Virus record (IMG/VR): IMGVR_UViG_3300013104_000001
Span: 223,407 to 287,406 of that record
Strand: one strand, 5' to 3'
Length of the DNA: 64,000 nucleotides
Part shown: piece after piece, positions 3,989 to 53,759 of the stretch
Layout of the letters: the number at the start of each line of letters is the position of its first letter
Numbering within the stretch: position 1 is the first letter of the stretch
The notes under the pieces: generated by a model
Told to the model about the DNA's origin: nothing
The model's input: the letters and a program-made list of their open reading frames with translations, nothing else
The model's database searches: none
Program-made: the position numbers and the translations under genes

Positions 3989-4028
3989 CGGCATAACGGG
4001 AGGGACTTCGGTCCCTCCCATTTATCGA
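3989..4028. terminator. Bidirectional hairpin terminator with CGGCATA on its left flank
   Basis: GGGAGGGAC-TTCG-GTCCCTCCC lies between convergent genes. Confidence 0.85.
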
Positions 4029-4032
4029 TGCA

Positions 4033-4368
4033 TCATTTTTTATTTAAGTTGTAAAGATCACGAATACTCGAGAGCATGCTATCGTTTTCATCGATGAGTT
4101 TGATTTTATCAACTATCATATCCCACTTAAAGGGATTTACGATACCATTCAATCGCATAATTAACCAATGCATGTGATACGCAACCCTTGCGTTCAATAA
4201 CACCATGCGAAAGTCACCGCGTTCTTCATACTGCGCAAGAGCAGTAGGCGGAGTATAATCAGTTGCCCGTGCTCTTAATAAATCAAGATGGTGAATTAAC
4301 ACCTTACGAAAGCCAGGGTCTTGATAGATGGCAATTGTAGGATGCACGATCTCGTTGGATACTTGCAT
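4033..4368 (-). CDS. Small conserved protein (gp70 position), possibly LysM/T4 gp53-like baseplate wedge fold
   Basis: 111 aa. The segment HWLIMRLNGIVNPF resembles the W-I-N-I-P signature of gp53/tail-X LysM proteins. Confidence 0.45.
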   Translation of the reverse strand: MQVSNEIVHPTIAIYQDPGFRKVLIHHLDLLRARATDYTPPTALAQYEERGDFRMVLLNARVAYHMHWLIMRLNGIVNPFKWDMIVDKIKLIDENDSMLSSIRDLYNLNKK

Positions 4369-4387
4369 GGAAATATACCTATACTTG

Positions 4388-4403
4388 TTTAAGCCTATAT
4401 TAT
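4388..4403 (+). promoter_or_regulatory. Putative early (virion RNAP) promoter, TTTAAGCCTATATTAT
   Basis: The same motif recurs at 15735, 23474 and 63391, each upstream of a + strand gene start. It resembles the phiKZ early TATATTAC-type consensus. Confidence 0.65.
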
Positions 4404-4436
4404 CATTGTGCAGTTAGGTTGATAAAAGGAACAGCA

Positions 4437-6536
4437 ATGAATCACATTACCGAAGCAAGTGAATTATCTCCCGATATCTTAGGCGGTATTCTTTGTTTGA
4501 ACCCTACCTTACATGGTGATAGCAGCCCACGATCTGCTATGTTTGGTGGTCACGCAGGACAAGCGGTTACCATTGAAGGTAGTACACCGCGAATGTTGAA
4601 GACCGGCATGGAGTACGTGTATGGTCGTCCAACATTTAAGATTGAAGCTCCGTGTCAGATGTTGGTCATTGGGGTTATCAATCGCTTTGCGACTAATCAC
4701 GTAGGTGCAGGCGGTATTCGTGAGAACCCCGAACGTTATGTGATCTATCAGAACGTAGAGCGCAGTAATGTCCCGACCTTTGGCATTATGTGTATTCCAA
4801 CTTACCATACGCGTAATCACGCATTAGGTTTTAAGTACAAGCCTCATGCGCGTAATATCCAGCGTCTGTATAATGAGAAAGAGTATTTCCAGAAAGGCGA
4901 TATCTTTGCAATCTCACCAAACTTAACGGAAGGTGGTGATTATAAGTACGGTCGTGAAACGAACGTTGCTTTCATGTCACTACCAGAGGTCGAGCAGGAC
5001 GGCATGGTGGTCACCGAATCGTTTGCCAAGGCGATGGCGTGTACCAAGATTGAAAACCGCATTGTACAATGGGGTGATGATTATGTGTTGTTGAACCTTT
5101 ATGGTGATGACACCACGTATAAAGCATATCCAGATATCGGTGAAAAGATTCGTGATGATGGCATGCTGTATGCCATGCGTCGAATCATACCGGGCACGGG
5201 TATTGTGAACATGACGCCAAAAGCATTGCGTATCTTCGATCCAGAGTTTGACAAACCTGTTTATGCAGAAGCAGGCGCTACCGTTATTAACGTAGCAGTG
5301 AACTCTGACCGTATGCGTACAGGTCGTGCTGAAGTTCAGTTCTATGATAAACAGACTGAACGCTATGAACGTGCTGCTCGTGAGTTCTCCAAACAACTGC
5401 GTAACCTGTATGACAATCTGTATCGTCAGTATGGTGCGGGTATGGTGCTGGAACCAGAACTCAACCGAATGATCACTGATGCGATCTCTGACACAGGTGG
5501 TATGGATCGTAAGATCAATAACCAAGGTCAGATCATGTCTGTCGATAAAGGTACCCAGGTTTATAACAAGGTACCGATTGGCGACTGGCGTGTGAAGATC
5601 ACCTTTGTTAAGCGTATCGAAGCCGGTGTACGTTTCAAGATCACTGATACCCATGGCGGTAAAGGTGTTATTGTAAATGTGATCAAGGATGAAGATGCAC
5701 CAACGGATGACTTCGGTAACCGTGCTGATGTAATCATGGATGATGTGTCGATCACCAAACGTATGAACTTAGGCAAACCAGTTGAGCAGTATATCAACGG
5801 GGCATCTGTCTATGCGACTAAGGTTGCGCGTGAGCTGGTTGCGAAGGGTGACACAGATGGTGCATGGAATCACCTGATGAGTTATTACGAAGCCGCAGCT
5901 TTTGAACAGTACGAGCTGATGCAGAATGGCATGTATAATGACAAGCCTACTCGTGACATGCATGTTGCTCATGTCTGTGCGAATGGCGTGCAGTTGTTTG
6001 CACCAACCAATCGTCGCTTCTATGGTGCTGAGCAATGTCGTCGTATCATGAAGAAGCATGACTTCCCGATCAGTCCAGTGCGGTATCGTGCACCTAATGG
6101 TGAAATGGTTCGTACGCGTGACCCGGTGATGATTGCACCAATCTACATCATCCTGCTGGAGAAGATGGGCGAGTATTGGGCGTCGTGTGCAATTCCAAAG
6201 CTCACGCACTTTGGTACACTCTCATCTCTGACGCAAGCAGACAAATACGCACTGCCATGGCGTAATACACCGACTCGTTTCGGTGAGTCTGAATTGCGAC
6301 TGTTCCTGGCGGCCTGTCGTGGTGTTTATGCTAACCGTCTACAGAGCATGGCGAACACGCCTGCAATGCAACGTGAAGCAGCATTGATGATGTTACGTCA
6401 TCAGACACCAATGAACATGGATAACGTGATTGACGAACGTAAAACACCATTGGGTCGTGCACGTCCGCTACAAATGTATAAGCACAACCAAAGCTGTCGT
6501 GGTATCGAGTTTGAAACCACTACACTTGCGAGCTAA
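4437..6536 (+). CDS. rpoB: Non-virion RNA polymerase beta-like subunit, C-terminal part (phiKZ gp71-73-like), uninterrupted
   Basis: Motifs include KITDTHGGKGVI (beta GDK..RHGxKG), KRMNLG and TRFGESE (QRFGEME). The ATG at 4437 follows an AAGGA RBS. Confidence 0.9.
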   Translation: MNHITEASELSPDILGGILCLNPTLHGDSSPRSAMFGGHAGQAVTIEGSTPRMLKTGMEYVYGRPTFKIEAPCQMLVIGVINRFATNHVGAGGIRENPERYVIYQNVERSNVPTFGIMCIPTYHTRNHALGFKYKPHARNIQRLYNEKEYFQKGDIFAISPNLTEGGDYKYGRETNVAFMSLPEVEQDGMVVTESFAKAMACTKIENRIVQWGDDYVLLNLYGDDTTYKAYPDIGEKIRDDGMLYAMRRIIPGTGIVNMTPKALRIFDPEFDKPVYAEAGATVINVAVNSDRMRTGRAEVQFYDKQTERYERAAREFSKQLRNLYDNLYRQYGAGMVLEPELNRMITDAISDTGGMDRKINNQGQIMSVDKGTQVYNKVPIGDWRVKITFVKRIEAGVRFKITDTHGGKGVIVNVIKDEDAPTDDFGNRADVIMDDVSITKRMNLGKPVEQYINGASVYATKVARELVAKGDTDGAWNHLMSYYEAAAFEQYELMQNGMYNDKPTRDMHVAHVCANGVQLFAPTNRRFYGAEQCRRIMKKHDFPISPVRYRAPNGEMVRTRDPVMIAPIYIILLEKMGEYWASCAIPKLTHFGTLSSLTQADKYALPWRNTPTRFGESELRLFLAACRGVYANRLQSMANTPAMQREAALMMLRHQTPMNMDNVIDERKTPLGRARPLQMYKHNQSCRGIEFETTTLAS

Positions 6537-6546: not shown

Positions 6547-8514
6547 ATGCAACAATATCATTGGCGCGAACTGATAGCCATGTCTGAAGAACAGATCTGG
6601 CAATTAGATCCTGCAATTAATAACCCAACCGTTCAGGTAACCGCCGAAGACATGGTTATCAAGATCCCCGTTCGACAAGTTATTGCCAGTTGGTATTGCT
6701 GGCCATTCCAGAAACTCTATAAGGACATGGTTCTGGAGAAACGTCACTTCATCACGGCGTTTCGTTTGTCGAACAAATCAATCCTGGGTGTAATGACCCA
6801 GGGTTATCGGGATTACGATAAGCTTATCAACGGTCAGCCGTTTGATGTGGTAGCAATGAACAGTCTGATCGCGAAGACAGTTAACCGCATCAATAATGCA
6901 TTCGTTGTAAAGATCCCGCAGTATGTCACGACGTCATCGATCAAGCAGTATATCCAGATCGTTGATGATCCTGACTTCAAAGCGATTCGTTCTGCCATGG
7001 AACCTAATCAGAACTCCATTCGTGAAGGCTATGATCAGTCTTACTCGATGCTGATGGATCCAAATAAGTTTGTGGGTAACCAGGTCGCTGAGTATGTCAA
7101 GCAAGGTTCTGCCTCTGCTGGACAGGCACTGCAATGTCTGGTTGTCCGCGGCTATCTGACCGACCATAACTCCCGTATCTTCGTACGACCGGTTATGGGT
7201 AACTATGTGGAAGGTCTGGGCAAGTTCTACGAATCGTTTGTGGAATCACGTTCTGCAACCAAAGCATCGCTGTTTACCAAGAAACCGCTTGAGGACTCAG
7301 AGTGGTTTAACCGTAAGATGCAGTTGGTTGCACAAGCCATCCAGAAGATCCATCTGGGTCAGGATTGTGGATCTACTCAAACGGTACCAATTGTCATGCG
7401 TCGTGGTTGGGCTTCCGGCATGGCCGGTAAGTATTATCTCGACGAAGACGGTTCGTTTAAAATGATCAACGAAGATGACAAGCATCTGGAGAACCGCCTG
7501 TTACATGTGCGCTCTCCAATGTATTGTAATCATCCTGACCGTACCGGCGTCTGTGAGCGTTGTTATGGTAAGCTTGCGGTAAGTATCCCGTATTTCAACG
7601 TACTGGGTAAGATCGGGGATAATGAAGTTATTGCAGGTCATGTGTCAGCAACAGAAATCGGTGAGGATCTCTCGCAGAAGATGTTGTCAACTAAACACCT
7701 CGATACCTCCTCGACTGTTGATCCCTTTATTGTCCGCCGTTCAGATATGTTATACGTGAAGCCAGGTCAGCGCGAGAACGCCATTCGCCTGAACCCACGT
7801 TTACGTAATGAGAAAGTGGTGATGAAGGTAAGTTTCGACAAAACTACCGCATTATCTGATATCGCAGTTGCCGAGAACTTAGATGAGGTCGCAACGCGTG
7901 TTTCTGGGTTCAATGAAATCGTGCTGGAGTTTGAACGTGAAGATGGGGGTAAAGAAGCAATCCCTATTAACACAACGCAGGGTTCTCGTCAGGGTCAATT
8001 CACTGTCGAGTTCTTACGTTATCTGCAGCGCGTAAGCTGGACGAGTGCTGATAAAGATTATATCGCAATCAGACTGGATCAGTTTGACTATGAATGTGAC
8101 GTCGTGGAACTGCCGTTAGTGCATGAAGACATGATGGCCTATCAGAAGCAAATCGAATCCTACATTCGTTTTAGCAAGGAGTCAGCGAACTGGAAAAACA
8201 AGTTTGTTACGCCTGATGAAGTCGGTGTGGTACTGGATGAATTCTATTCCCTGTTGCGTCAGCGTTTAGGTGTGAACATTATTCATGCCGAGATGATGTT
8301 GTATGCAGTGATGACCATGAATCCAGGTCAAGGCGATTATCGTCTGCCACGGGCATATGAACCACGGCAGTTTAGTTCTTATCACGAATGTATCGAGTAT
8401 CGTTCTCTCTCTGTACAGCTCGTGTATCAGGAACAAGCAGCAGTGATGCTCAAGCCATCGACCTTCTTGAATGACAAGCGACAACCGCACCCGATGGATG
8501 AGATCTTCAAATAA
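6547..8514 (+). CDS. rpoC: Non-virion RNA polymerase beta'-like subunit, C-terminal part (phiKZ gp74-like)
   Basis: Bridge-helix-like ESRSATKASLFTKKPLEDSEWFNRK, Zn site DCGS...RSPMYC...VCERCYG, and trigger-loop-like IGEDLSQKMLSTKH. Confidence 0.9.
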   Translation: MQQYHWRELIAMSEEQIWQLDPAINNPTVQVTAEDMVIKIPVRQVIASWYCWPFQKLYKDMVLEKRHFITAFRLSNKSILGVMTQGYRDYDKLINGQPFDVVAMNSLIAKTVNRINNAFVVKIPQYVTTSSIKQYIQIVDDPDFKAIRSAMEPNQNSIREGYDQSYSMLMDPNKFVGNQVAEYVKQGSASAGQALQCLVVRGYLTDHNSRIFVRPVMGNYVEGLGKFYESFVESRSATKASLFTKKPLEDSEWFNRKMQLVAQAIQKIHLGQDCGSTQTVPIVMRRGWASGMAGKYYLDEDGSFKMINEDDKHLENRLLHVRSPMYCNHPDRTGVCERCYGKLAVSIPYFNVLGKIGDNEVIAGHVSATEIGEDLSQKMLSTKHLDTSSTVDPFIVRRSDMLYVKPGQRENAIRLNPRLRNEKVVMKVSFDKTTALSDIAVAENLDEVATRVSGFNEIVLEFEREDGGKEAIPINTTQGSRQGQFTVEFLRYLQRVSWTSADKDYIAIRLDQFDYECDVVELPLVHEDMMAYQKQIESYIRFSKESANWKNKFVTPDEVGVVLDEFYSLLRQRLGVNIIHAEMMLYAVMTMNPGQGDYRLPRAYEPRQFSSYHECIEYRSLSVQLVYQEQAAVMLKPSTFLNDKRQPHPMDEIFK

Positions 8515-10075: not shown

Positions 10076-10084
10076 TCTCGTAAG

Positions 10085-10125
10085 AGGCCGGAGGGTGATA
10101 CCTCTGGCCTTTTATGCGGTTTTTT
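10085..10125 (+). terminator. Hairpin terminator followed by TTTATGCGG and a T-run
   Basis: AGGCCGGAGG-GTGATA-CCTCTGGCCT just after the helicase stop codon. Confidence 0.8.
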
Positions 10126-15016: not shown

Positions 15017-15245
15017 TGATCGCGATACCATCGAGCATCAAATTATCGTAGCCAATCGTTATGAGGGGTCAACCGATGATTTGGTTCAGCAAGTGAAAGA
15101 TCGTGTAGCACGTGGTGGATTGGTATTTAACACCGGCGACGACATTGATCAAAGCAGCTGGACACCTGAGAAAGTGGCTGAGTTGAAACGCGTCGTTCAA
15201 CACATCCGTGACTCAGAACAAAGCGTCAAACATGGCCAGGGGTAA
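14949..15245 (+). CDS. Hypothetical protein
   Basis: 98 aa with an AAGGA RBS, followed by a terminator. The start could instead be 14997. Confidence 0.55.
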   Translation: MDLRNLSKDSKVIPVTMDDHGVSDRDTIEHQIIVANRYEGSTDDLVQQVKDRVARGGLVFNTGDDIDQSSWTPEKVAELKRVVQHIRDSEQSVKHGQG

Positions 15246-15262
15246 TCCCTGGCTTTATGCCA
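15235..15262 (+). terminator. Hairpin followed by TTTATGCCA
   Basis: GCCAGGG-GTAAT-CCCTGGC-TTTATGCCA. Confidence 0.7.
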
Positions 15263-16286: not shown

Positions 16287-16991
16287 ATGATTACCGTTAC
16301 TGATGCTGTAAAGCGTCGTTTTCGTTTAGAGCGTATTATTGCCAACGTTCGACGTGATGGCTGGACAGGCAAGGACATCGAGTTCGTTATTAAGAGCGAT
16401 GATAGCGCCTCGATCAATGACACCACCCGTGGCGGCCCCAACCGCATGACAGCGACTTACCTGATCATGGGTAACCGTGCTGAAGTGAGTGTAACCGTTC
16501 ATGCCGAAACGAACAGCCACGACGGTATCAAAGATATCTGCGCGACCATCCGTGATGCTCAGGGTAAAGAGCTCGAAATCAGTGACGTGCGTTTCGCGGT
16601 GACAACTGAACTACAGGAATGCATGCTGCGTGTTGAACAGACACCGGCCTCTGTGCTTGATGGTCTGGTAGGCGGGCCGATGGGCGATCCAACGCATATG
16701 TTCATCATCGACGAAAGCTACAACGTATTTGTCGGTACCGAGAACGATACCCAAGCCGACTATACCTTGGCTGGTTGTCTGATTGCTAATCTCAGTTCTC
16801 ACAATGCCGAGGCCAATGGCATGGAAATCATCGGGAGTTATCCTGATGAAGATGGTCACCATCACTATGTTTCAATCTACTGGGATGCACCGTTTGTTTC
16901 TAACGTGACACCTAGTGAGAAAGATGCATGGTTTAAACATCTGGATGCATTAGTCACACTACTGCTGGAAAAGATTAAAGTTTCAGTGTAA
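16287..16991 (+). CDS. Hypothetical protein
   Basis: 234 aa with an AGGAG RBS and a terminator downstream. Confidence 0.75.
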   Translation: MITVTDAVKRRFRLERIIANVRRDGWTGKDIEFVIKSDDSASINDTTRGGPNRMTATYLIMGNRAEVSVTVHAETNSHDGIKDICATIRDAQGKELEISDVRFAVTTELQECMLRVEQTPASVLDGLVGGPMGDPTHMFIIDESYNVFVGTENDTQADYTLAGCLIANLSSHNAEANGMEIIGSYPDEDGHHHYVSIYWDAPFVSNVTPSEKDAWFKHLDALVTLLLEKIKVSV

Positions 16992-16999
16992 GTAATATC

Positions 17000-17032
17000 A
17001 GGTAGGGGGCATACTCCCTACCTTTATTTTTT
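17000..17032 (+). terminator. Classical intrinsic terminator
   Basis: AGGTAGGG-loop-CCCTACCT followed by TTATTTTTT. Confidence 0.85.
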
Positions 17033-17107
17033 GTGGTAATCTGCCACAGAAAAACTGTTGGTAATACTACCGACGGTATTCACTCAATAAACTGCGAGGA
17101 ATAAACG

Positions 17108-17713
17108 ATGTCTAAATTTGATGATCGGGTTAAAAGGTTACAGGAGTTCGGCAAGAATGCAAGACCTAGCTTTGTTGAAAAGCTGGATGACGTAACCAAG
17201 ATTAAACACGGGTGTCTCGATATAACGTACAAACGCTATCCGACGCCTGATGCAGAAATAGAGATTTTCTATAAAGAGAAGATTCTCTTAGCGCGTAAAC
17301 CCAATCTGACCGAAGCATTAGAGTACGCTTATGTCGGTGTTACCCTATCTAACCCGCTACTGGGCGACTGGTGCTACGGATATGAGAAGGATGATGTGTT
17401 ATCACATATCACCGATATGTTGAAAATGTTGGGGGTAGAGGTACCGCGTCCAAATGTAGACACCCGTCTCATCACAGGTATCCATCGTAGCATTCAGTTA
17501 CGCACTGAAGAGGGTTACCTTCATCCTAAAGAAGAAGACATCCGGGTAACAGTGCATCGTTGCATCCCTGCGAACTGGGGCGCACTAGTCACAACGATCT
17601 CGTTATCTAACTGGAATGTGACTATCAGTCAGAAGTTCAATGAATATGGTCATGACGGTCTGATCAACTTGGATGAATTGGCGCGTAAGTTATATGCGAA
17701 ACACTTTGAATAA
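17108..17713 (+). CDS. Hypothetical protein
   Basis: 201 aa with a GAGGA RBS. Confidence 0.75.
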   Translation: MSKFDDRVKRLQEFGKNARPSFVEKLDDVTKIKHGCLDITYKRYPTPDAEIEIFYKEKILLARKPNLTEALEYAYVGVTLSNPLLGDWCYGYEKDDVLSHITDMLKMLGVEVPRPNVDTRLITGIHRSIQLRTEEGYLHPKEEDIRVTVHRCIPANWGALVTTISLSNWNVTISQKFNEYGHDGLINLDELARKLYAKHFE

Positions 17714-18127: not shown

Positions 18128-18166
18128 CGGCATATAACCCCTCCGTAATGGAGGGGCTTTTATGAC
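18128..18166. terminator. Bidirectional terminator, CGGCATA-hairpin-TTTTATGAC
   Basis: CCCCTCC-GTAAT-GGAGGGG between convergent genes. Confidence 0.85.
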
Positions 18167-18182
18167 ACTGCTTTTTTTTTTA

Positions 18183-21155: not shown

Positions 21156-21244
21156 AAGAGGTCCTTGAGGTGGCTTTACTTGAGGCTTACATATATTGAC
21201 GCGAAAGATGTCGACAATTACAACGTTTTATAAAAGGAAAGGAC

Positions 21245-24826: not shown

Positions 24827-24856
24827 AGGGTGTCCGAAAGGGCACCCTTTATGCCC
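24827..24856 (+). terminator. Hairpin followed by TTATGCCC
   Basis: AGGGTGTCC-GAAA-GGGCACCCT. Confidence 0.75.
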
Positions 24857-29701: not shown

Positions 29702-29740
29702 CAGCATAGGGAGAGGGCAAACGCCCTCTCCTTTATGCCG
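29702..29740. terminator. Bidirectional terminator, CAGCATA-hairpin-TTATGCCG
   Basis: GGGAGAGGGC-AAAC-GCCCTCTCCT between convergent genes. Confidence 0.85.
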
Positions 29741-29759
29741 TCTATTCTTTTTTTTTTGT

Positions 29760-30871: not shown

Positions 30872-30901
30872 CGGCATAAACGGGACAGCAACTGCCGCCC
30901 C
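30872..30901 (-). terminator. Hairpin followed by TTTATGCCG on the minus strand
   Basis: The minus strand reads GGGGCGGCA-GT-TGCTGTCCC-GTTTATGCCG. Confidence 0.7.
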
Positions 30902-30931
30902 AGATCCTGGTATCGAGTTGTAACTGGCGCG

Positions 30932-31927: not shown

Positions 31928-31971
31928 CGGCATAGAGGTGTGGACACCCTGACCTAAGCCAAGATGTCCAC
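31928..31971 (-). terminator. Hairpin followed by TATGCCG, downstream of the DNA polymerase gene
   Basis: The minus strand reads GTGGACATCTTGGC-TTAG-GTCAGGGTGTCCAC-ACCTCTATGCCG. Confidence 0.75.
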
Positions 31972-37036: not shown

Positions 37037-37045
37037 GGAGCGAGC

Positions 37046-38299: not shown

Positions 38300-38300
38300 T

Positions 38301-38352
38301 CGGCATAAAGGCCTGGTCCCCCGCAAGGAGGACCAGAGCCTTGTTTATGCCG
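38301..38352. terminator. Bidirectional terminator, CGGCATA-hairpin-TATGCCG
   Basis: AAGGCCTGGTCC..GCAA..GGACCAGAGCCTT flanked by perfect inverted heptamers. Confidence 0.85.
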
Positions 38353-41302: not shown

Positions 41303-41311
41303 TATAACCTC

Positions 41312-42337
41312 TTATTTCGTTTCTTTTGGAACCCACCACTGAAACTCGTTGGTCATGGGATCGATATATGGATAGCCGATAAAGTTAGTGCGCTGCATTT
41401 CAGATGGCGTGATCTTACGGTAAAATGAATTACGGTTAGCTGCCTTCATTTGCGGGTTAAAGATTTCTACACAACTATTGAAATCAAGAATCAACGATTG
41501 TGTATTGTACCGCCAACCAACGCACGACCAGTTACAACTGATTTGGTTATTGTTCTTAATCAGAGGACTTTCTCGGGTCGTGTTAAAGTCAAATGCATTA
41601 CCAATTGGGTTGGTTGTGCAGATCGCTGCATAGGGCGCACCAATCTTTGTAACATAACGATAAGTCTGGTCCAGGATGATGCGATAGAAACGCATGGTGT
41701 AATCAATATAGTTGTTAACAATGGCTTCCCAATAAGGAACCATCTCACCAAGGTATACTGAAGACGAATAAGTTTGCAGCAAATCGAGGATCATGGTAAT
41801 CGGGTCACCGGAGATGTTCGTGTGTGAAGACGTTATTTGATACGCTTCATTATACTCCGATTGTCCATCAACCATGGTCCAGGTTTCTTTACGTGCACCC
41901 GGTGGGGCGGTAAAGGTATCGATTACAATATCAGGGAAACCCGTCATTGATTCTAAGGTGTTTGATAAAATCGGCACAAAAGCCTGTTGGTTATCAAACA
42001 GCGCAGAATACGATTTTCGGTCAATTGTGCCCTTTGCATCGAACATCGAACGGATAGCGCCTGGGATGGTATTCGGGTTATTTGAACCCAGTGCCAAGAG
42101 CTTTTCTTGCCGCATTAGATTATCGTATGACAGGTTAAGGATTGGGCGTGTGAAAAAGGTATACCCCATGACGTCTTTATTGATTGGTAAGAAGGCGCTG
42201 CGGTTACTGAATTTGTTCAAACCCCAATACTGATGTGCAAGCGATGAGGATACACTACCGTACCCCGATTCCCTCGCAGCCGAGTCAATGCTATCGGTCC
42301 ATAACCCAGGATTGTATTCGTCGTTGTTATCGGTCAT
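41312..42337 (-). CDS. Virion structural protein, possibly a tail-tube-like baseplate subunit (gp88 position)
   Basis: 341 aa with a GAGGTG RBS. Assignment is by synteny. Confidence 0.6.
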   Translation of the reverse strand: MTDNNDEYNPGLWTDSIDSAARESGYGSVSSSLAHQYWGLNKFSNRSAFLPINKDVMGYTFFTRPILNLSYDNLMRQEKLLALGSNNPNTIPGAIRSMFDAKGTIDRKSYSALFDNQQAFVPILSNTLESMTGFPDIVIDTFTAPPGARKETWTMVDGQSEYNEAYQITSSHTNISGDPITMILDLLQTYSSSVYLGEMVPYWEAIVNNYIDYTMRFYRIILDQTYRYVTKIGAPYAAICTTNPIGNAFDFNTTRESPLIKNNNQISCNWSCVGWRYNTQSLILDFNSCVEIFNPQMKAANRNSFYRKITPSEMQRTNFIGYPYIDPMTNEFQWWVPKETK

Positions 42338-42386
42338 TACTCACACCTCTTTAAAAAATAAATATCCGTTGAATCAAGGAGTCAAT

Positions 42387-43547
42387 ATGTTACCAGTTGT
42401 TATTACGGGGGCGATTACACTGGCCAGTTCGCTTGCGCTTGTCGCAGAGCGAATTCTCGCTGCGAAACAAAAAGCAAGTGAGATCACCGGTAGTGTTGAC
42501 AAAACCCTTACCACTTTAGGTCAGATGGGTACCCGCGACCTGATTACTTTCACTAAAGTGACCCGTATGGAACCTCTGGTGTTAGTAGACGAGCGTTTAA
42601 AGTTCGACCCCTCTACACCGGAAATCCTGCAGGTGTTGACCAGCCTGATTGCTGGCTATTACACACAAGCTTTCGCCATGCTCGGTCAGGTTGACGGCAT
42701 CGATGTTGTTGGCACGCTGGATAAGCTTAACCCAGCGCGTACTGGTATTGGTCTGAATAACTTCGATGGTGATGACAGCGGTTACCATAAGTTTCCTAAT
42801 CAGTCAAACACCCCTCTCTATAGTATCGGGCTTGAGGCCTTAGAAACTGTAGTGGGTGAAGCCAAGCCGGTTAAAATCCAGACTGATAAAAATGTCATTG
42901 CTGATATCAGTTCACCGACTAACCTGGCGATCGGTAAAATGATCAAGGTATCACTGTCATCTAACGGTAATGTGGTTGAGATCCCAATCACCATCCGTGT
43001 GAAACCAGTCACTACCACCGCTGAAGCCGTTACGGCTATTCTTGGTATCGGTACCACCAAGAACTCTGTATCTGAGCGCTGGAACCGTTTCAAAGCAGGC
43101 GAGCTGACTTTCACCAACCTGGCAACAGGCGATGACGTTATCCGTCAGCACAAGAAAATCCTGGTTCAGGACACTTCCGGCTTCTATGCTGAGATCGTTC
43201 GTCGCGCTCGCGGTAACGCGAAGAAAGGCATGATCTCTGGTAACCTGTCTCTGGCAACTGATTCTAACTGTATCCTTATTAGCTCCGATACTGCGCTGGA
43301 TGTATCGCGTGAACTCGGCGGCACACTGGATAACTTTAAAATCCGTGAAGCCATGTTCTCGAAAGTTTATTCTAATATGCTGATCATTGTTGATCAGATG
43401 CGTGGAATGGTTTCTTTCTATTACCGTGGCGAGCAGTTACCGACCCGTCTGTCACTGCAAGACATTAAACTGCATAATAAAGGCAGTGGTCCAGACATCA
43501 TGTCTATCTTCACTGCGTTTGCCGAAAACAAAATCCCGTCGCTTTAA
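42387..43547 (+). CDS. Head/inner-body protein (gp89 position)
   Basis: AAGGAG RBS before the ATG at 42387. Contains an IGLEALE processing-type motif. Confidence 0.7.
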   Translation: MLPVVITGAITLASSLALVAERILAAKQKASEITGSVDKTLTTLGQMGTRDLITFTKVTRMEPLVLVDERLKFDPSTPEILQVLTSLIAGYYTQAFAMLGQVDGIDVVGTLDKLNPARTGIGLNNFDGDDSGYHKFPNQSNTPLYSIGLEALETVVGEAKPVKIQTDKNVIADISSPTNLAIGKMIKVSLSSNGNVVEIPITIRVKPVTTTAEAVTAILGIGTTKNSVSERWNRFKAGELTFTNLATGDDVIRQHKKILVQDTSGFYAEIVRRARGNAKKGMISGNLSLATDSNCILISSDTALDVSRELGGTLDNFKIREAMFSKVYSNMLIIVDQMRGMVSFYYRGEQLPTRLSLQDIKLHNKGSGPDIMSIFTAFAENKIPSL

Positions 43548-43559
43548 GGATCCCGTTCG

Positions 43560-44465
43560 ATGAACATTTTTCAATATGTCAATAATCTCTTCGGCGCTGT
43601 TGACAAACGCGACGTGTTAGGTGAGATCGACAGCTTGCGTGATGAGCTGACTCGCTTCACCATCGGCAACTTTAAGAAAGCTATCGATGCGGGCGTTAAC
43701 ACTCAGGGTGCTAACTACTACACTAAGCAGCTTTCCCGCGAGTTTGATCGCGTACGTCAGTCAGATCGTCTGCGTGGTAATAACCTGATCGAGCAGACTT
43801 ATATTGCGTTAAACCAAACCACCATGACGCTGGAATGGCTGCGCAAACAAGTCGAGCGTGAATTCGGTGGTAAGCTTGTGCGTGAAGCAGTTGACTTTAA
43901 ACAAGCCAACTTCCTGCGCTATATCGACTCAATCGATTTCTACCTGCGCTACGCTCGTTCGATGTTGCTGGTTGTAACCAACCTGCAGATCAATCCAAGC
44001 GAAGACATCACCAAGCACTTCACCATGCATGAGATCAAATTCCTGGCTGATACAGCGAAGCATTTCGTTTATCTGACCTCGATGTTCTCTCAGCCTGTGA
44101 GCGTGACTGAAAAGGTTTTCGAAGCTGTCCCATCGGTTGTGGTGTCAGACGCGGATCAGCAAGCGATCGAAGCCGTACTGGGAAGCGCAAAAACCGACCC
44201 AATGCAATCAGGTTTCCTTTCACTTGATTATAACCCATTCTTCCTCATCGGTCGTCGTCGTGCAGAGCGTCGTGTAAAACGCCTGCGTGCTGCAGAAGCT
44301 GCGGCCATTGCTACAGAGCTGACTTTGAGCAAACTGCTTGAAGCACAGGCTGGCGGCAATAACGACCCTGCAGTTCAGAAACAGATCGACTACTACACCA
44401 ACCAGCTGAATAAGCTGAACAATGAAGTAGATCAGATTAACGCTGAAGTCGCGGTAGAGGCATAA
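43560..44465 (+). CDS. Head/inner-body protein (gp90 position)
   Basis: 301 aa with a C-terminal coiled coil. Assignment is by synteny. Confidence 0.7.
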   Translation: MNIFQYVNNLFGAVDKRDVLGEIDSLRDELTRFTIGNFKKAIDAGVNTQGANYYTKQLSREFDRVRQSDRLRGNNLIEQTYIALNQTTMTLEWLRKQVEREFGGKLVREAVDFKQANFLRYIDSIDFYLRYARSMLLVVTNLQINPSEDITKHFTMHEIKFLADTAKHFVYLTSMFSQPVSVTEKVFEAVPSVVVSDADQQAIEAVLGSAKTDPMQSGFLSLDYNPFFLIGRRRAERRVKRLRAAEAAAIATELTLSKLLEAQAGGNNDPAVQKQIDYYTNQLNKLNNEVDQINAEVAVEA

Positions 44466-48153: not shown

Positions 48154-49518
48154 ATGTCCGCACTCGACAGGTTCCTTTTTGACGCGGGCATGGAGGGGTT
48201 TAACGACCCCTCCTCTATACCGCCCGTTGGTATAGTCGTGCCCTTTTTTGGCGTAGAGGAGTTTGCAGAAGCTGATGAAGTCTCCCGTGTTGTCATGGAA
48301 GATATGAATCGCCAAGCAGACGCTGTCTATAAACTGCAAGAGACGTTGGTGTACATTAATGCCAATCGTCCTAACTTTGATCGCGGTAATGCCGAGCATG
48401 TAATTCAGGCGCTGGGTGATGTGCAGGTGCTGATGCCTAATATGGAAGACCCAGTGACTATCATGGGTTCTCTTGAGCACTACACTCCGTCTTACTCCAG
48501 TCATCTGCTTGGTCACGGTACCGAGTCGATCACAGGTATGATCACTGCAGCTATTCAGAAACTGATTGAACTTCTGAAGAAAGGCGTTGGCTGGTTGGTC
48601 AATGCCATGCGCAGCGCGTCGATGGTGCTGGGTAAACAGAAGCGCGAAGTGACTGAGTTAAGCGCTTGGTTAAAAGCAAACAAAACTACCGCACCTACTG
48701 TTGTAAGCGTGCCGGATAACTTCATCCTGATAAGTAAGTTATCTTACTTCTATTTGCCAGGTGAAGATAAGCCAGTTACGGCCGATCGCATCCCGTATGA
48801 AATTCGTCGTCTTAGCAGGTTCTGTCGAAATGTTAACGATGAGTTCATCGCCAAATACATCATGCTTGGTCGTATGTATTTGAAAGTGATCAACAACATT
48901 GACTTATCTCAGCCGTCAAGTGTGTTGTTCCGCCAAACCTTTAAAGGTCAACCGGTCTTCACAATCGGTGGCAGGCCATTAAGTCGCCGTAGTAATGGTG
49001 ACGATTCTCTTGAGCAAGCTGACTTTATCGGTGGTATTGGTTTCTGTGCGCCTAATGTGCATAAAAAGATCACCTCGCCAGTTGGGCTAGCCGATGATGG
49101 TTCCGAACAACAGAAGTATTTTAATCTGTTGAAGAACATGGAGCAGTTTGAGTTCAACAACGGAATGTGGATGGATCGTAATCTGCGCTTTGTCCAACCT
49201 ACCCCGTGTAGCATCCAAGAAGGCATTGTGATCACTGATGAACTCGATAGCCTCATTGACAGCATTATTACTAACGACATCAGTAATGAGGTTACTAGTT
49301 TTAATAATGAAGTTAGAGCGACTATCGAGATGCTGCGTCGTTATCAGTTATCAAGTGTCCGTAGCAACTTGCCAAATGACGATTACATGAACACCATTGG
49401 GTTTTCTTTATTCGCCATGGCTAACGCGATCAGTCGCTTGCCGTATGAGATCACACGTGAAGTGAATAACTTTACTAACGCCATGCGCGAGTACGTGACC
49501 AAGTCAGTTAAGTCTTAA
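48154..49518 (+). CDS. Internal head protein paralog
   Basis: AGMEG, GSLEH and HGTES motifs followed by an amphipathic helix. Confidence 0.75.
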   Translation: MSALDRFLFDAGMEGFNDPSSIPPVGIVVPFFGVEEFAEADEVSRVVMEDMNRQADAVYKLQETLVYINANRPNFDRGNAEHVIQALGDVQVLMPNMEDPVTIMGSLEHYTPSYSSHLLGHGTESITGMITAAIQKLIELLKKGVGWLVNAMRSASMVLGKQKREVTELSAWLKANKTTAPTVVSVPDNFILISKLSYFYLPGEDKPVTADRIPYEIRRLSRFCRNVNDEFIAKYIMLGRMYLKVINNIDLSQPSSVLFRQTFKGQPVFTIGGRPLSRRSNGDDSLEQADFIGGIGFCAPNVHKKITSPVGLADDGSEQQKYFNLLKNMEQFEFNNGMWMDRNLRFVQPTPCSIQEGIVITDELDSLIDSIITNDISNEVTSFNNEVRATIEMLRRYQLSSVRSNLPNDDYMNTIGFSLFAMANAISRLPYEITREVNNFTNAMREYVTKSVKS

Positions 49519-51009: not shown

Positions 51010-51031
51010 GTTATACCTTAACGTATAGCCG

Positions 51032-51064
51032 AGGGGAGGGGGATTCCCCTCTCCTTTTATACCG
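51032..51064 (+). terminator. Hairpin followed by TTTTATACCG
   Basis: AGGGGAGGGG-GATT-CCCCTCTCCT followed by TTTATACCG. Confidence 0.75.
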
Positions 51065-51081
51065 ACCAAAAGGTGAAATGC

Positions 51082-53397
51082 ATGACCAGCATGAATACAT
51101 TGGGTCCAGCACAGTCAACGTTGCTTGCTGATGAATCAGACGGTAAACAAAAAAAGAAAGTTACCGACAACGCCAAAACCGAATCTACCGAGATGTCAAT
51201 TGAGATCTTGAAGAAAACCAGTAAAGAGAAACCTGAGACTACCGAGGGCGACGAACCTGCTTTCGGGTTTGGTAGTGAAGGCTACGCAATGCTGGACAGT
51301 ATGTCGTTTGACTTAACCGAACACAGCGACAAATATATCCAAGAGCTTCTGGATAAAATTACCACCATCGTGATTGAAGCCAACGGCGATCTTAATAAGA
51401 AAGACCTGGAGAAGATCCGTAACGTCGGTCTGGAAGATTACCGTGATCTGGCACAAGCTGCTATGAAGCGCATCATGCAGTTTATCCGTTGGTCTATTAA
51501 CCAAGGCAAAGAAGGGATCAAGCGTGTCGCTGATCGTCTGGGCCGGTTAGGTATGAAGTCGATGTATGTTGAGCGTAAACTCGATATCTCAACTGACAGT
51601 TCATTGCCTACGGATAAGTTTGTATTAGCACGTTCTTTCCCATTGTTGATGCTTGCTGATAAACCGCCAGCGAATGCAATGGATGTGCTGAACTCGTTGA
51701 ATAAAACCAAGTATCTATTCACCTTGGTCCACAACGATTATCAGAACTACCAGAACCTGTTTAAACAAGCTGTTGCAACTGGCTCACGTTCTGAAACGCT
51801 GGAGATGATCAATAACTATTTGAATTCACTCTCAGGTCGTTTAGGCGCTAAGCCCAATCCGCAGTTTAATAACAACCTGAGCTTTAACTATCTGCCAGGT
51901 GGTTATCGTCTGGTGTTCTCAACGGGCGATTCATTTGCCGATTGCTCTGCGATACTTGTGCGCGTACCTGGTCAGTATAGTGTTGCGCCGTCTGCACCGC
52001 GTCCTGATAAGTCGAGCCTGGTTCGCTTGATGGCTGAGATCAAACAGTTCCTGCGCACCATCAATGAGATCTATGGAAAAGTCTCTAGTCGTTTGGAGTC
52101 TGACTTCCGTAATATCTCCCGCAGTGCTGAACGCGATATTAAGACGTTTGACTCGTCTGTTGATATCCGTACTGCATCGACAACCGTTGAATGGTTTGTT
52201 GAACAGCAGTCACGTATTTTCACTCGTACGATGATGTTGTCATGTTCGGTATTGAATGCGTGCCTGGACTACTGTATCGCTGCTATTGGCGGTAAGCCTG
52301 CTGCCGGTATGGAAGACTTCGATGACAGCTACACTATCGAAGCGCTCGGTGAGCAACTGGATTCCATTGATGATCGTCTACGTAGTATTGAAGTAGATGC
52401 ATCGGTTATTCAATCTATCGGGGACAACAAAGACCTGGTTGACTGTGATAACGATTATGTAATCCGTCAGCTGATTGAGACCAATGCAACCGAACCATTC
52501 ACGCCGGGTTACGGTATTGATAACCTGCGTAACATGTGGCATTTGGTACGAGCCGGTAAAACCACTGAAGTGATTACCCGTCGTTTAGGTGCGATCATGG
52601 ATGCGACATCCGATCTGGATACTTCGGTAAAATTCATGAAGACGCTCTTCACTGAAGGTCGTTTATTTGAATGCCGGACAACGGATGATTACATTGCTGA
52701 CTTTACTGCCGGTCATCCACTGTGTTCATTCCTGCACCGTGCTGAGCGTGAATCATTAGGTTCAGCGCAGATTGCTAACTACCTCGAGCAGAACGTTGAT
52801 AAGGTCAGTGCAACAGTCACGACACTTATGGTCTTTGCTGAAACACTGAGCGATACCGTTGTTGATGGTGAGTTTACCGTTAGTCGGTTGAAGGAGTTTA
52901 TGTTGAACGCTCCTCAATTACCATTTACATCAGCGATGCTTTGCGGCGGGTATGAGATCAAGGAACGTTCAGAAAAGCTTGCAGGTTTAGTTGTACGCAG
53001 CTATACACTGGAACACGTCAAAGACTTGTCACCAATTGAAAGCTTTGATGGTCATGACAGTGAAATGAATGGGTTCATTGATCAGCAGGTTAAACGGTAC
53101 GAAGCAGAGTACGCTCGCTTAGCACGTATCGTTGAATTGCTGCAAGTGGGCACAGGTCATCTGCGTTATATCACTGCAGCGGTTGTCGATAACCTTAACG
53201 CCGGTGGTTTGAAAGGTGAAGGGGATAACTGGGTGTATTCAGCAATGGAGTACTTGACTGTTGCGACTCGCCAGTACCGTTGGATGTATCGCATGACAAT
53301 CCAGCTCGCTATGTATAACCGACTGACAATTGAGGCTGCGAATCAGTATATGGCAGGAGGGTTCTATGGAAACGACGAGCAACAAGAGTCTGTATAA
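51082..53397 (+). CDS. Large internal head protein, apparently two modules joined by an internal processing site
   Basis: About 771 aa. FGSEG and VGLED occur near the N-terminus and AGMED internally at 52303-52317. Confidence 0.7.
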   Translation: MTSMNTLGPAQSTLLADESDGKQKKKVTDNAKTESTEMSIEILKKTSKEKPETTEGDEPAFGFGSEGYAMLDSMSFDLTEHSDKYIQELLDKITTIVIEANGDLNKKDLEKIRNVGLEDYRDLAQAAMKRIMQFIRWSINQGKEGIKRVADRLGRLGMKSMYVERKLDISTDSSLPTDKFVLARSFPLLMLADKPPANAMDVLNSLNKTKYLFTLVHNDYQNYQNLFKQAVATGSRSETLEMINNYLNSLSGRLGAKPNPQFNNNLSFNYLPGGYRLVFSTGDSFADCSAILVRVPGQYSVAPSAPRPDKSSLVRLMAEIKQFLRTINEIYGKVSSRLESDFRNISRSAERDIKTFDSSVDIRTASTTVEWFVEQQSRIFTRTMMLSCSVLNACLDYCIAAIGGKPAAGMEDFDDSYTIEALGEQLDSIDDRLRSIEVDASVIQSIGDNKDLVDCDNDYVIRQLIETNATEPFTPGYGIDNLRNMWHLVRAGKTTEVITRRLGAIMDATSDLDTSVKFMKTLFTEGRLFECRTTDDYIADFTAGHPLCSFLHRAERESLGSAQIANYLEQNVDKVSATVTTLMVFAETLSDTVVDGEFTVSRLKEFMLNAPQLPFTSAMLCGGYEIKERSEKLAGLVVRSYTLEHVKDLSPIESFDGHDSEMNGFIDQQVKRYEAEYARLARIVELLQVGTGHLRYITAAVVDNLNAGGLKGEGDNWVYSAMEYLTVATRQYRWMYRMTIQLAMYNRLTIEAANQYMAGGFYGNDEQQESV

Positions 53398-53713
53398 TGC
53401 TGCCCGTATTCCGGTGTTATACGAGTATCCCTTTGACTTTACACCTCACGCTAGACTGTTAGCTAACGAAAACGTTAATGAGCAGCCTTCTCAGGCGTTT
53501 GCTGAGATGTTTGCAGCCATGACAGGGGATGCGTGGTCGCTCACGCCTAAGACACCTTACACGCTGTATGGTGCGAAGGTTCTTTATATTGGCACCACGA
53601 AGAAAGAGTTCCCAACCAGTAAACGGTATCCGTATACACTGGTGTTGCAACTAAGTAGTCGTTATAACTTCAGAAAGTTGTACTTAAGTTTCAAAGTGCT
53701 TTCAAGTAGCTGA
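53366..53713 (+). CDS. Small hypothetical (possibly virion) protein
   Basis: GGAGG RBS before the ATG at 53366. 115 aa. Confidence 0.65.
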   Translation: METTSNKSLYNAARIPVLYEYPFDFTPHARLLANENVNEQPSQAFAEMFAAMTGDAWSLTPKTPYTLYGAKVLYIGTTKKEFPTSKRYPYTLVLQLSSRYNFRKLYLSFKVLSSS

Positions 53714-53714
53714 T

Positions 53715-53759
53715 CGGCATAGAGGGAGGAGCGATGCTCCTCCCTCATGCTTTATGCCG
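53715..53759. terminator. Bidirectional terminator, CGGCATA-hairpin-TTTATGCCG
   Basis: GAGGGAGGAGC-GAT-GCTCCTCCCTC between convergent genes. Confidence 0.9.

What the first reader, a model, noticed from the sequence alone, without database searches (positions are those of the whole stretch)
3989..53759. Strand-oriented terminator signature: GC hairpin followed by (TT)TATGCCG instead of a long U-tract
Seen: hairpins ending + strand units are followed by TTTATGCGG (10111), TTTATGCCA (15254), TTATGCCC (24849) and TTTATACCG (51056). Hairpins ending - strand units show the reverse complement CGGCATA on their left (30872, 31928). Hairpins between convergent genes tend to carry it on both sides: perfect at 38301/38346 and 53715/53753, with one side degenerate at 3989, 18128 and 29702. 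The motif thus tracks transcription direction in about 11 cases. One unexplained copy sits at 26054 between + genes. Established: TATG is also the core of phiKZ late promoters read by the nvRNAP. Inference: a sequence-specific termination, pausing or RNA 3'-processing signal for the phage RNAPs, or a binding site for a phage RNA-binding or export factor.
Basis: partly seen in the sequence, partly recalled or inferred. Interest (0 to 1): 0.62.

Follow-up and report, generated by a model that had tools for sequence, protein, structure and literature searches.

The report
Jumbo-phage terminator: hairpin plus TTATGCCG
The GC hairpins followed by TTATGCCG are real and mark the ends of this giant phage's transcription units, but the same terminator signature (hairpin + TTATKYYGT) was already mapped in phages phiKZ and 201phi2-1, so this is a new member of a known kind.

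Summary
The window is the last 64 kb of a 287-kb metagenomic jumbo phage related to Erwinia phage RAY, and it encodes its own multisubunit RNA polymerases. Across the genome, 69 of 460 TATGC copies follow a strong hairpin (4.6 expected). Of 61 intergenic units, 58 lie just after a co-oriented gene, and 16 of 17 convergent junctions carry a flanked hairpin, mostly on both sides. Divergent junctions carry none. The element is the conserved terminator motif published for phiKZ (hairpin + TTATKYYGT, 61 terminators) and 201phi2-1. In those phages, mapped RNA 3' ends fall inside TTATGYY, most often just before the conserved G. Four such 201phi2-1 terminators beat lambda T0 in uninfected Pseudomonas. 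No mapped phiKZ start site uses the terminator's TATG, so it does not act as a late promoter there. RAY keeps the motif at orthologous sites while the stems change by compensatory substitutions. SPN3US, phiEaH2 (same host genus as RAY), PCH45, Goslar, EL, OBP and AR9 largely lack it, so it follows phage lineage, not host. What the GCCG part does, and any specificity for phage polymerases, remains untested. No RNA data exist for this phage.

The parts
3989..4031 (.). Bidirectional terminator at a convergent junction. CGGCATA 3989-3995 is the - strand motif. The hairpin is 3998-4019 with a UUCG loop. The right flank ATTTATCGATGC is degenerate.
10082..10119 (+). Terminator after the helicase-like gene. 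Hairpin about 10082-10113, with one G.U pair, then TTTATGCGG at 10111-10119 and a T-rich tail.
15234..15262 (+). Terminator: hairpin 15234-15254, then TTTATGCCA at 15254-15262.
18128..18181 (.). Bidirectional terminator. CGGCATA 18128-18134 (- strand), hairpin 18138-18156, degenerate CTTTTATGACAC on the right, then a T10 run at 18172-18181. The RAY orthologue keeps the motif and changes the stem by compensatory substitutions.
24827..24856 (+). Terminator: hairpin 24827-24848 with a GAAA loop, then TTATGCCC at 24849-24856.
29702..29757 (.). Bidirectional terminator. CAGCATA 29702-29708 (- strand, degenerate), hairpin 29710-29731, TTTATGCCG 29732-29740, T10 run 29748-29757. Conserved in RAY with a different stem.
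30872..30902 (-). - strand terminator: hairpin 30881-30902, then TATGCCG (read as CGGCATA at 30872-30878 on the + strand). In RAY the motif is kept and the hairpin is replaced.
31928..31971 (-). - strand terminator after the DNA polymerase gene: hairpin 31940-31971, then TATGCCG (CGGCATA at 31928-31934).
38301..38352 (.). Bidirectional terminator with a perfect motif on both sides: CGGCATA 38301-38307, hairpin 38308-38342, TATGCCG 38346-38352. Conserved in RAY with compensatory stem changes.
48192..48222 (+).
51031..51064 (+). Terminator: hairpin 51031-51056, then TTTATACCG at 51056-51064.
53715..53759 (.). Bidirectional terminator with a perfect motif on both sides: CGGCATA 53715-53721, hairpin 53722-53746, TATGCCG 53753-53759.

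Best explanation
These are the transcription terminators of an Agricanvirus-like, phiKZ-related jumbo phage. They are the local version (hairpin + YTTATGCCGTY) of the conserved phiKZ-type terminator, hairpin + TTATKYYGT.

Proposed mechanism: the nascent RNA folds into a GC-rich hairpin. The polymerase then stands on a short, weak UUAU hybrid and releases the RNA about 6-9 nt after the stem, within UAUGYY and most often just before the conserved G. Where genes converge, the element is built as a palindrome (CGGCATAA-hairpin-TTATGCCG), so that it stops transcription from both directions.

Shown here: the anatomy, the orientation rule, conservation under compensatory stem change, selection on the RNA strand, and identity of the motif with the published one.

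Taken from published data on relatives: the position of the 3' ends, and termination activity in vivo.

Inferred: that the phage's own polymerases stop here in this phage, and that the G-C-C-G part sets a pause or release point (pyrimidine at the 3' end, G incoming).
For: (1) Anatomy and statistics in this genome. 69 of 460 TATGC copies follow a top-1% hairpin, against 4.6 expected. TATGC in hairpin flanks is 41 observed against 0.9 expected. Aligned on TATGC, the consensus is Y-T-TATGC-C-G-(T/A)-Y-Y.
(2) Orientation. 58 of 61 intergenic units follow a co-oriented gene, with a median of 45 nt from stop codon to TATG, and 28 face an opposing gene. 16 of 17 convergent junctions carry a flanked hairpin and true divergent junctions carry none. 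In ++ contexts, 24 hairpins carry the motif on the right (one of them on both sides) and only 1 carries it on the left alone.
(3) Selection at the RNA level. Single mismatches in the stems of one-sided units are G.U rather than A.C, 8:0 here and 6:1 in RAY.
(4) Conservation. Orthologous RAY terminators keep the motif while stems and loops change, with paired substitutions.
(5) Identity with a mapped motif. Putzeys 2024 report 61 phiKZ terminators with BCCYCCCCHWWDGGGRRGGBYTTATKYYGT. Motif A of 201phi2-1 (n=59) resembles it. My own scans give TATKYYG beside strong hairpins at 33/140 here, 39/142 in RAY, 41/218 in phiKZ and 45/184 in 201phi2-1, each against fewer than 1 expected.
(6) 3' ends. 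I laid the published phiKZ termination sites on the genome. In 27 motif terminators the end lies at T0 (2), +2 (9), +4 (7) or +5 (9) of T0-A-T-G-Y-Y-G.
(7) Activity. The four 201phi2-1 terminators that beat lambda T0 in vivo all read hairpin-TTTATGNY|GT, with the reported end just before the G.
(8) The phage encodes multisubunit RNA polymerase subunits, and sigma-70-like promoters are not enriched.
Against: There is no transcript data for this phage. The four RNA runs offered gave zero reads, which is no test. Termination here is therefore inferred from relatives whose polymerase subunits share only 26-30% identity with this phage's. ONT-cappable-seq 3' ends have an uncertainty of a few nucleotides and cannot by themselves separate termination from processing. 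The reporter assays in 201phi2-1 used the host polymerase, not the phage enzymes. The role proposed for GCCG is untested. Some terminators in this genome and in phiKZ have T instead of G at that position (TTATTTYG) or lack the motif altogether.
Confidence: 0.82

Rival explanations
1. The motif is a late promoter for the non-virion polymerase (TATG with +1 at the G) that merely sits behind the previous gene's terminator hairpin.
For: TATG is the phiKZ late promoter core, with the G as start site. In tandem contexts the motif lies upstream of the next gene. This phage probably has TATG-type promoters, because TATGTA lies 32-35 nt upstream of four divergent - strand gene starts.
Against: 28 of the 58 units that follow a co-oriented gene point into the 3' end of an opposing gene. 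No TATGCC lies at divergent junctions, which instead carry CCTA(C/T)ATTAC and TATGTA motifs. The distance from motif to next start codon ranges from 1 to 660 nt with no preferred value. In phiKZ, 0 of 36 hairpin+TATG units have a mapped same-strand start within 3 nt of the G, while separate promoters lie 21-49 nt further on.
Confidence: 0.04
2. The 3' ends arise by RNA processing. An endonuclease cuts in UAUGCC and the hairpin protects the new end, so the motif is a cleavage or stability signal rather than a termination signal.
For: 3'-end mapping cannot tell termination from processing. The sequence after the hairpin is poor in U (3 of 8), and the units fail canonical terminator rules.
Against: 201phi2-1 terminators of this type cut downstream reporter expression in a terminator trap more strongly than lambda T0. 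The ends lie 6-9 nt after the stem, the normal window for intrinsic release. The motif follows phage lineage and not host, whereas host RNases would be shared by RAY and phiEaH2.
Confidence: 0.08
3. The G-Y-Y-G extension is the binding site of a phage-encoded factor on the RNA 3' end or on the DNA. Such a factor could be a termination factor, or a factor for mRNA export from the phage nucleus or for mRNA stability.
For: The conservation goes beyond what a hairpin plus weak hybrid needs. The distribution is lineage-specific and independent of host. These phages must export mRNA from a protein-walled nucleus.
Against: No factor is needed in uninfected cells for 201phi2-1 terminators. If release occurs before the G, the G and later bases are not in the RNA. 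Other nucleus-forming phages (SPN3US, PCH45, Goslar) lack the motif. ChmC eCLIP found no sequence motif and peaks near start codons.
Confidence: 0.1
4. The units are copies of a mobile or recombinogenic intergenic cassette, like the promoter-early stem-loop (PeSL) cassettes of T4-type phages. Their similarity would then reflect common descent and not function.
For: Several units are followed at 24-32 nt by an early-promoter-like CCTACATTAC, which gives a terminator-promoter module. The same arrangement is seen in phiKZ.
Against: Stems, loops and spacers differ from unit to unit, and only the 8-10 nt motif is shared. Orthologous units in RAY sit at the same junctions, with diverged stems and an unchanged motif. 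The orientation rule holds at 58 of 61 units.
Confidence: 0.03

Closest known systems
Conserved phiKZ terminator motif, 5'-BCCYCCCCHWWDGGGRRGGBYTTATKYYGT-3' (Putzeys et al. 2024, microLife, PMC10914365; 61 of 133 mapped phiKZ terminators)
   Same: A GC-rich stem-loop is followed by (T)TTAT, then K-Y-Y-G-T. The units sit at the 3' ends of transcription units. Palindromic versions with (C)AGCATAA on the left occur between convergent genes. Separate promoters lie 20-50 nt downstream.
   Different: Here and in RAY the variable K-Y-Y is nearly fixed as G-C-C, giving TTATGCCGTY. The stems are mostly purine-rich in the 5' arm. One-sided units mostly lack the upstream CATA half that many phiKZ terminators carry. 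The genome is 47% G+C against 37%, and the polymerase subunits are only 26-30% identical. No 3' ends have been mapped here.
201phi2-1 terminator motif A, alone or with motif B (Poppeliers et al. 2024, Microb Biotechnol, PMC11512511)
   Same: Hairpin + TTTATG(Y)(Y)G, with 15 bidirectional terminators. The strongest ones read GGCTTTATGCC|GTT, which is the same nonamer as here.
   Different: Those were validated by long-read 3'-end mapping and by a reporter trap in the host. Here there is sequence evidence only.
Canonical bacterial intrinsic (Rho-independent) terminators
   Same: A GC-rich RNA hairpin, release a few nucleotides after the stem, and bidirectional use between convergent genes.
   Different: There is no U-tract: 3 U in the 8 nt after the stem. 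The units fail the rule of at least 5 T in 8. A specific conserved sequence takes the place of the U-tract, and CGGCATA rather than an A-tract lies on the upstream side.
phiKZ late promoter (TATG, +1 = G), read by a pocket of the beta-like subunit GP123 (Yakunina 2015, PMC4666361; IUCrJ 2026, PMC12809450)
   Same: The same four bases, TATG, on the non-template strand.
   Different: The location and context are those of a terminator. No start sites map to it in phiKZ. In this genome the likely promoters read TATGTA, whereas the terminators read TATGCCG behind a hairpin.
Terminators of other giant phages with multisubunit polymerases (SPN3US, phiEaH2, PCH45, Goslar, EL, OBP, AR9)
   Same: GC hairpins at gene ends. 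Several keep a TTAT core (CTTTTATTT in SPN3US and phiEaH2).
   Different: They have T-rich tails and almost no TATKYYG: 0/170, 2/80, 4/86, 3/42, 1/132, 0/46 and 0/40 flanks.

Membership tests
phiKZ-type conserved terminator (hairpin + TTATKYYGT) | GC-rich stem-loop immediately upstream of the motif | tested here: met
   69 of 460 TATGC copies have a top-1% hairpin directly upstream, against 4.6 expected. The stems are 6-16 bp and the loops mostly 4-5 nt.
phiKZ-type conserved terminator (hairpin + TTATKYYGT) | TTAT followed by K-Y-Y-G-T within a few nt of the stem | tested here: met
   The position matrix reads Y-T-T-A-T-G-C-C-G-(T/A)-Y-Y. TATKYYG occurs within 5 nt of strong hairpins in 33/140 flanks against 0.43 expected.
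phiKZ-type conserved terminator (hairpin + TTATKYYGT) | Lies at the 3' end of genes or transcription units, co-oriented with them | tested here: met
   58 of 61 intergenic units follow a co-oriented gene, with a median of 45 nt from stop codon to TATG.
phiKZ-type conserved terminator (hairpin + TTATKYYGT) | Two-sided (palindromic) form between convergent genes | tested here: met
   16 of 17 convergent junctions genome-wide and 5 of 5 in the window.
phiKZ-type conserved terminator (hairpin + TTATKYYGT) | RNA 3' ends map inside or just after the motif | not testable with these tools
   No RNA run holds this phage. In phiKZ (n=27) and 201phi2-1 (n=4) the ends fall at T2 or at Y4/Y5, before the G.
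phiKZ-type conserved terminator (hairpin + TTATKYYGT) | The host genome is a phiKZ-related jumbo phage with its own multisubunit RNA polymerases | tested here: met
   PHROG matches to RNA polymerase beta-like subunits at 4419-6536, 6547-8514 and 22150-23460. The nearest relatives are RAY and other Erwinia jumbo phages. There is 26-30% identity to phiKZ subunits.
Canonical intrinsic terminator | U-rich tract (about 5 or more U in 8) directly after the hairpin | tested here: not met
   TTATGCCG has 3 T in 8. None of the units in 24000-43900 is flagged by the canonical scan, whose hits equal the shuffle expectation.
phiKZ-type late promoter (TATG, +1 G) | Located upstream of a co-oriented gene and used as a transcription start | tested here: not met
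   28 of 58 units face an opposing gene and none lies at a divergent junction. In phiKZ, 0 of 36 such units have a mapped start at the G. Start sites in this phage could not be mapped.
T4-type PeSL (promoter-early stem-loop) mobile cassette | Repeated whole cassette (stem-loop plus promoter) that flanks variable genes and mediates shuffling | tested here: inconclusive
   Some units are followed by CCTACATTAC at 24-32 nt. However, the hairpin sequences are not repeats of each other, and positions are syntenic with RAY. Mobility was not tested.

The most novel reading that the evidence does not exclude
The TATG(YYG) behind the hairpin may be read by the phage polymerase itself. The pocket in the beta-like subunit (GP123 in phiKZ) binds non-template TATG at -3..+1 to fix the late-promoter start site. 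During elongation, the same pocket could grip the TATG that follows the hairpin and pause the enzyme with the G (or the next G) as the incoming nucleotide. The hairpin would then release a weak UUAU hybrid. One recognition pocket would then serve both initiation and termination. This would explain why a specific sequence replaces the U-tract, why the motif follows phage lineage and not host, and why a third of the mapped phiKZ ends (9 of 27) lie exactly at TAT|G.
Probability: 0.2. Interest if true: 0.65.

Novelty: new member of a known kind. Interest (0 to 1): 0.3.

Why it matters
For annotation, the motif gives a simple, strand-specific marker of transcription-unit ends in Agricanvirus-like jumbo phages (about 65 units in this genome). 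It needs no RNA data, and it separates terminators (hairpin + TATGCCG) from likely promoters (CCTACATTAC and TATGTA).

For biology, the comparison made here adds three things to the published descriptions:
- The motif is shared by lineages whose polymerase subunits are under 30% identical.
- It is nearly absent from other phiKZ-related or giant phages, including one that infects the same host genus.
- Published 3' ends cluster just before the conserved G.

Together these make a defined question testable with existing purified phiKZ polymerase: do these non-canonical multisubunit polymerases use a sequence-specific pause or release element in place of a U-tract? As a discovery it is modest, because the element and its role as a terminator are already in the literature.

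Tried and rejected
(1) RNA evidence for this phage. The look-up of sequencing runs found only DNA or unknown-type holders (rhizosphere and plant metagenomes, and small runs of coded organisms). The four RNA runs offered by species label gave 0 reads on window:26500-32400. This is no test, not evidence of silence.

(2) Late-promoter reading. Rejected on junction context and on phiKZ start-site data.

(3) Two terminator flavours for two polymerases. In phiKZ I classed mapped terminators as TATG-type or T-rich (TTATTTYG) and compared the class of the nearest upstream mapped start. The counts were TATG-type E1/M4/L14 and T-rich E3/M3/L9, Fisher p = 0.30. No support.

(4) Does conservation of the GP123 TATG-pocket residues track the presence of TATG terminators? 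The alignment of homologues from nine phages gave no clean correlation. PCH45 keeps 9 of 16 pocket residues yet has T-rich terminators, while this phage and RAY keep about 6-8. The alignment is at about 25% identity. Inconclusive.

(5) Tetraloop orientation (UUCG/GNRA against their complements). It is biased the expected way here (13:3) and in RAY (11:3), but not in phiKZ or 201phi2-1. I relied on the G.U against A.C test instead.

(6) A fixed-register measure of flank complementarity was uninformative, because the spacers vary.

(7) Bare pattern counts without hairpin context (TTATGYYG) do not separate the genomes.

(8) Rfam gave no family match anywhere in the window.

(9) Literature searches for the exact words TTATGCCG, TATGCCGT, CGGCATAA or TTTATGCCG, and for Agricanvirus plus terminator, found nothing relevant in the held library.

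(10) The supplements of the two journal versions are not held. I used the bioRxiv supplement of Putzeys et al. and read only terminators T001-T118 and start sites P001-P004 and P008-P126.


Full report
WHAT THE WINDOW IS. The window is G000:C1:223407-287406, the last 64 kb of a 287,406-bp IMG/VR virus record with direct terminal repeats. It has 47% G+C. Its nearest named relatives are the Erwinia jumbo phages RAY, Ea35-70, Simmy50, AH06 and others of genus Agricanvirus, at about 74% nucleotide identity. The window encodes three RNA polymerase beta-like subunits (4419-6536, 6547-8514, 22150-23460). It also encodes a DNA polymerase (31980-33701, - strand), a helicase and a tail fibre. The polymerase subunits are 77-88% identical to RAY's but only 26-30% identical to those of phiKZ and 201phi2-1. 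Sigma-70-like promoters are not enriched (27 against 30.6 in shuffles). This fits a phage that transcribes with its own enzymes, as shown for phiKZ (abstract of PMC4666361).

CHECK OF THE OBSERVATION. The bare heptamer TATGCCG is only mildly over-represented in the window: 13 copies against 6.7 +/- 2.8. In the whole genome there are 61 copies against 37 for the reversed control. The strong signal is the coupling to hairpins. Of 460 TATGC copies in the genome, 69 have a fold in the 41 nt upstream that is as stable as the best 1% of random windows, against 4.6 expected. The figure is 36 of 61 for TATGCCG. I also counted, without naming any motif, all 5-mers in the 12 nt on either side of perfect GC hairpins (stem of at least 7 bp). 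The top words were TATGC (41 observed, 0.9 expected), TTATG, ATGCC and TGCCG. Aligned on TATGC, the consensus is Y-T-TATGC-C-G-(T/A)-Y-Y, with 0-3 nt between stem and TATG.

ORIENTATION. I made gene calls by codon-usage scoring, which gave 308 genes in 37 strand blocks.
- Of 61 intergenic hairpin+TATGC units, 58 lie downstream of a gene on the same strand, with a median of 45 nt from stop codon to TATG.
- 28 of these face a gene on the other strand.
- Of 17 real convergent junctions, 16 have one hairpin flanked by (G)GCATA on the left and TATGC(C) on the right. True divergent junctions have none.
- In tandem ++ contexts, 24 hairpins carry the motif on the right (one of them on both sides) and only 1 carries it on the left alone.
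- In the window, all five convergent junctions and both tandem - strand sites fit this rule.

THE STRUCTURE ACTS IN RNA. In one-sided units whose stem has a single mismatch, the mismatch is G.U on the motif-bearing strand and not A.C. An A.C mismatch would be G.U on the other strand. The counts are 8:0 here and 6:1 in RAY. At four orthologous junctions, RAY keeps the flanking motif unchanged while stems and loops differ, with paired changes. Examples are CCCCTCC/GGAGGGG against GGCCCTCC/GGAGGGCC at 18138, and GGTCC/GGACC against GGCC/GGCC inside the 38308 stem.

IT IS A KNOWN ELEMENT. Putzeys et al. 2024 (PMC10914365) mapped 133 phiKZ termination sites with ONT-cappable-seq. They report that 61 predicted intrinsic terminators share 5'-BCCYCCCCHWWDGGGRRGGBYTTATKYYGT-3', a stem-loop followed by a TTAT region, and they found six bidirectional terminators between convergent genes. 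Poppeliers et al. 2024 (PMC11512511) found a closely similar motif A in 59 of 132 terminators of 201phi2-1, with 15 bidirectional. TTATGCCGT is one instance of TTATKYYGT. The terminator sequences in the bioRxiv supplement look like the ones here. They include palindromic pairs such as CAGCATAA-hairpin-TTATG. My own scan of the fetched genomes confirms this. TATKYYG lies within 5 nt of strong hairpins in 33/140 flanks here, 39/142 in RAY, 41/218 in phiKZ and 45/184 in 201phi2-1, each against fewer than 1 expected.

WHERE THE RNA ENDS. I laid the published phiKZ sites T001-T118 on the phiKZ genome. In the 27 sites that have a hairpin followed by TATG, the reported end is 2-8 nt after the stem. 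Counting T0-A1-T2-G3-Y4-Y5-G6, the end falls at position 0 (2 sites), 2 (9), 4 (7) or 5 (9). For 201phi2-1, the paper names four terminators that outperformed lambda T0 in a reporter trap in uninfected P. chlororaphis. All four read hairpin-TTTATGNY|GT, with the reported end immediately before the conserved G. One of them reads GGCTTTATGCC|GTT. These are therefore true terminators, at least for the host enzyme. The release point lies in the usual window after the hairpin, and the conserved G is most often the first base not incorporated. I infer, but did not test, that UUAU supplies the weak hybrid and that Y|G sets a pause or release point. This is reminiscent of the pyrimidine(-1)/G(+1) preference of bacterial elemental pauses, which I state from my own knowledge.

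NOT A PROMOTER. TATG with the G as +1 is indeed the phiKZ late promoter core (PMC4666361). I compared the published phiKZ start sites P008-P066 with all 36 hairpin+TATG units in the same interval. None has a same-strand start within 3 nt of the G. Six have a separate early, middle or late start 21-49 nt downstream. In this genome the junction analysis gives the same answer. The distance from motif to next start codon ranges from 1 to 660 nt with no preferred value. The motifs that do lie at divergent junctions and behind terminators are different:
- aaC-CTA(C/T)ATTAC-N4-GTG, the counterpart of the phiKZ early TATATTAC, occurs at about 25 intergenic sites and often 24-32 nt after a terminator.
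- TATGTA lies 32-35 nt upstream of four divergent - strand genes.

DISTRIBUTION. The motif is nearly absent beside hairpins in the other phages tested:
- SPN3US: 0/170 flanks
- phiEaH2: 2/80
- PCH45: 4/86
- Goslar: 3/42
- EL: 1/132
- OBP: 0/46, although TTATGT is enriched there
- AR9: 0/40
SPN3US and phiEaH2 use CTTTTATTT, and PCH45 uses TTTTTG. phiEaH2 infects Erwinia amylovora, as RAY does. The G-Y-Y-G extension therefore follows phage lineage and not host. This is the best indirect argument that the phage transcription machinery has a stake in it.

TESTS OF FURTHER IDEAS. In phiKZ, the TATG-type and T-rich (TTATTTYG) terminators do not differ significantly in the class of the nearest upstream promoter (Fisher p = 0.30). 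There is thus no sign of one flavour per polymerase. [quoted passage not shown] That suggests the polymerase could recognise the terminator's TATG during elongation and pause there. Nine of the 27 phiKZ ends lie at TAT|G, the same register as initiation. I compared the 16 named pocket residues across homologues from nine phages and found no clean correlation with terminator type. The idea remains open and unsupported.

WHAT COULD NOT BE DONE. No RNA run holds this phage, and four RNA runs offered by species label gave zero reads on 5.9 kb. The 3' ends in this phage are therefore inferred. I read only part of the published phiKZ tables: T001-T118, P001-P004 and P008-P126. The held library has no paper with the exact motif words or on Agricanvirus terminators.

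VERDICT. The interpretation as a termination signal is right. The element is the phiKZ-type conserved terminator in a new lineage, with K-Y-Y fixed as G-C-C. The promoter link is a shared tetranucleotide without promoter use. Specificity for phage polymerases or for a binding factor is unproven.

Noticed in passing
window 18172-18181 and 29748-29757; genome-wide list: T9-T11 runs are strongly strand-biased in the genome: 20 T runs of at least 8 on the + strand against 3 A runs. Nineteen of the 20 are intergenic, and most of these lie just downstream of a terminator hairpin, usually after its motif. This includes 8 of the 17 convergent junctions and two sites between - strand genes. RAY has them at the two orthologous sites checked, and phiKZ shows the same at some bidirectional terminators. 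They may be a second, + strand-specific stop module. Their function is unknown.
   Followed up: partly
window 4395-4402, 23483-23490, 63399-63406 (906-913 lies inside a called gene); about 25 intergenic sites genome-wide: An early-promoter-like motif, aaC-CTA(C/T)ATTAC-N4-GTG, which is the counterpart of the phiKZ early TATATTAC. Most copies lie 13-105 nt upstream of + strand genes (a few are further), and often 24-32 nt after a terminator motif. This gives terminator-promoter modules like those in phiKZ.
   Followed up: partly
It lies within a 125-nt intergenic region that is about 95% identical to RAY, against about 74% elsewhere, and that includes a fully conserved TTAGCG-TAAGCT-CGCTAA hairpin. 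This could be a conserved leader or a small RNA. There is no Rfam match.
   Followed up: partly
window 30836-30846: A C11 homopolymer, the only C run of at least 8 in the genome, lies in the 146-nt spacer between two - strand genes, just upstream of the 30872 terminator. The orthologous RAY spacer lacks it.
   Followed up: no
window 16991-17108: Three consecutive stable hairpins (fold of -48 kcal/mol for 142 nt) lie in one ++ intergenic spacer. The first is followed by TTTATTTTTTG, the T-for-G variant of the terminator motif. This may be a small structured RNA or a tandem terminator.
   Followed up: no
window 21190-21195 (- strand) and 58456-58461 (- strand); also genome positions 125261, 128553 and 134941: TATGTA lies 32-35 nt (54 nt in one case) upstream of - strand genes at divergent junctions. 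TATGTA is 31% intergenic, against 12% of the genome. This is probably the phage's TATG-type middle or late promoter, distinct from the terminator's TATGCCG.
   Followed up: partly
G000:C1:96633-96677 (outside the window): An early-promoter-like CCTACATTAC overlaps the 5' arm of a terminator hairpin that is followed by CTATGCCC. Transcripts that start there would lack the full hairpin, while upstream transcripts would be stopped.
   Followed up: no
whole window: Near-identical DNA occurs in a rhizosphere metagenome (the probable source) and in runs from other studies. Small shares occur in plant, phyllosphere, leaf-litter and soil metagenomes. This suggests a plant-associated host.
   Followed up: no
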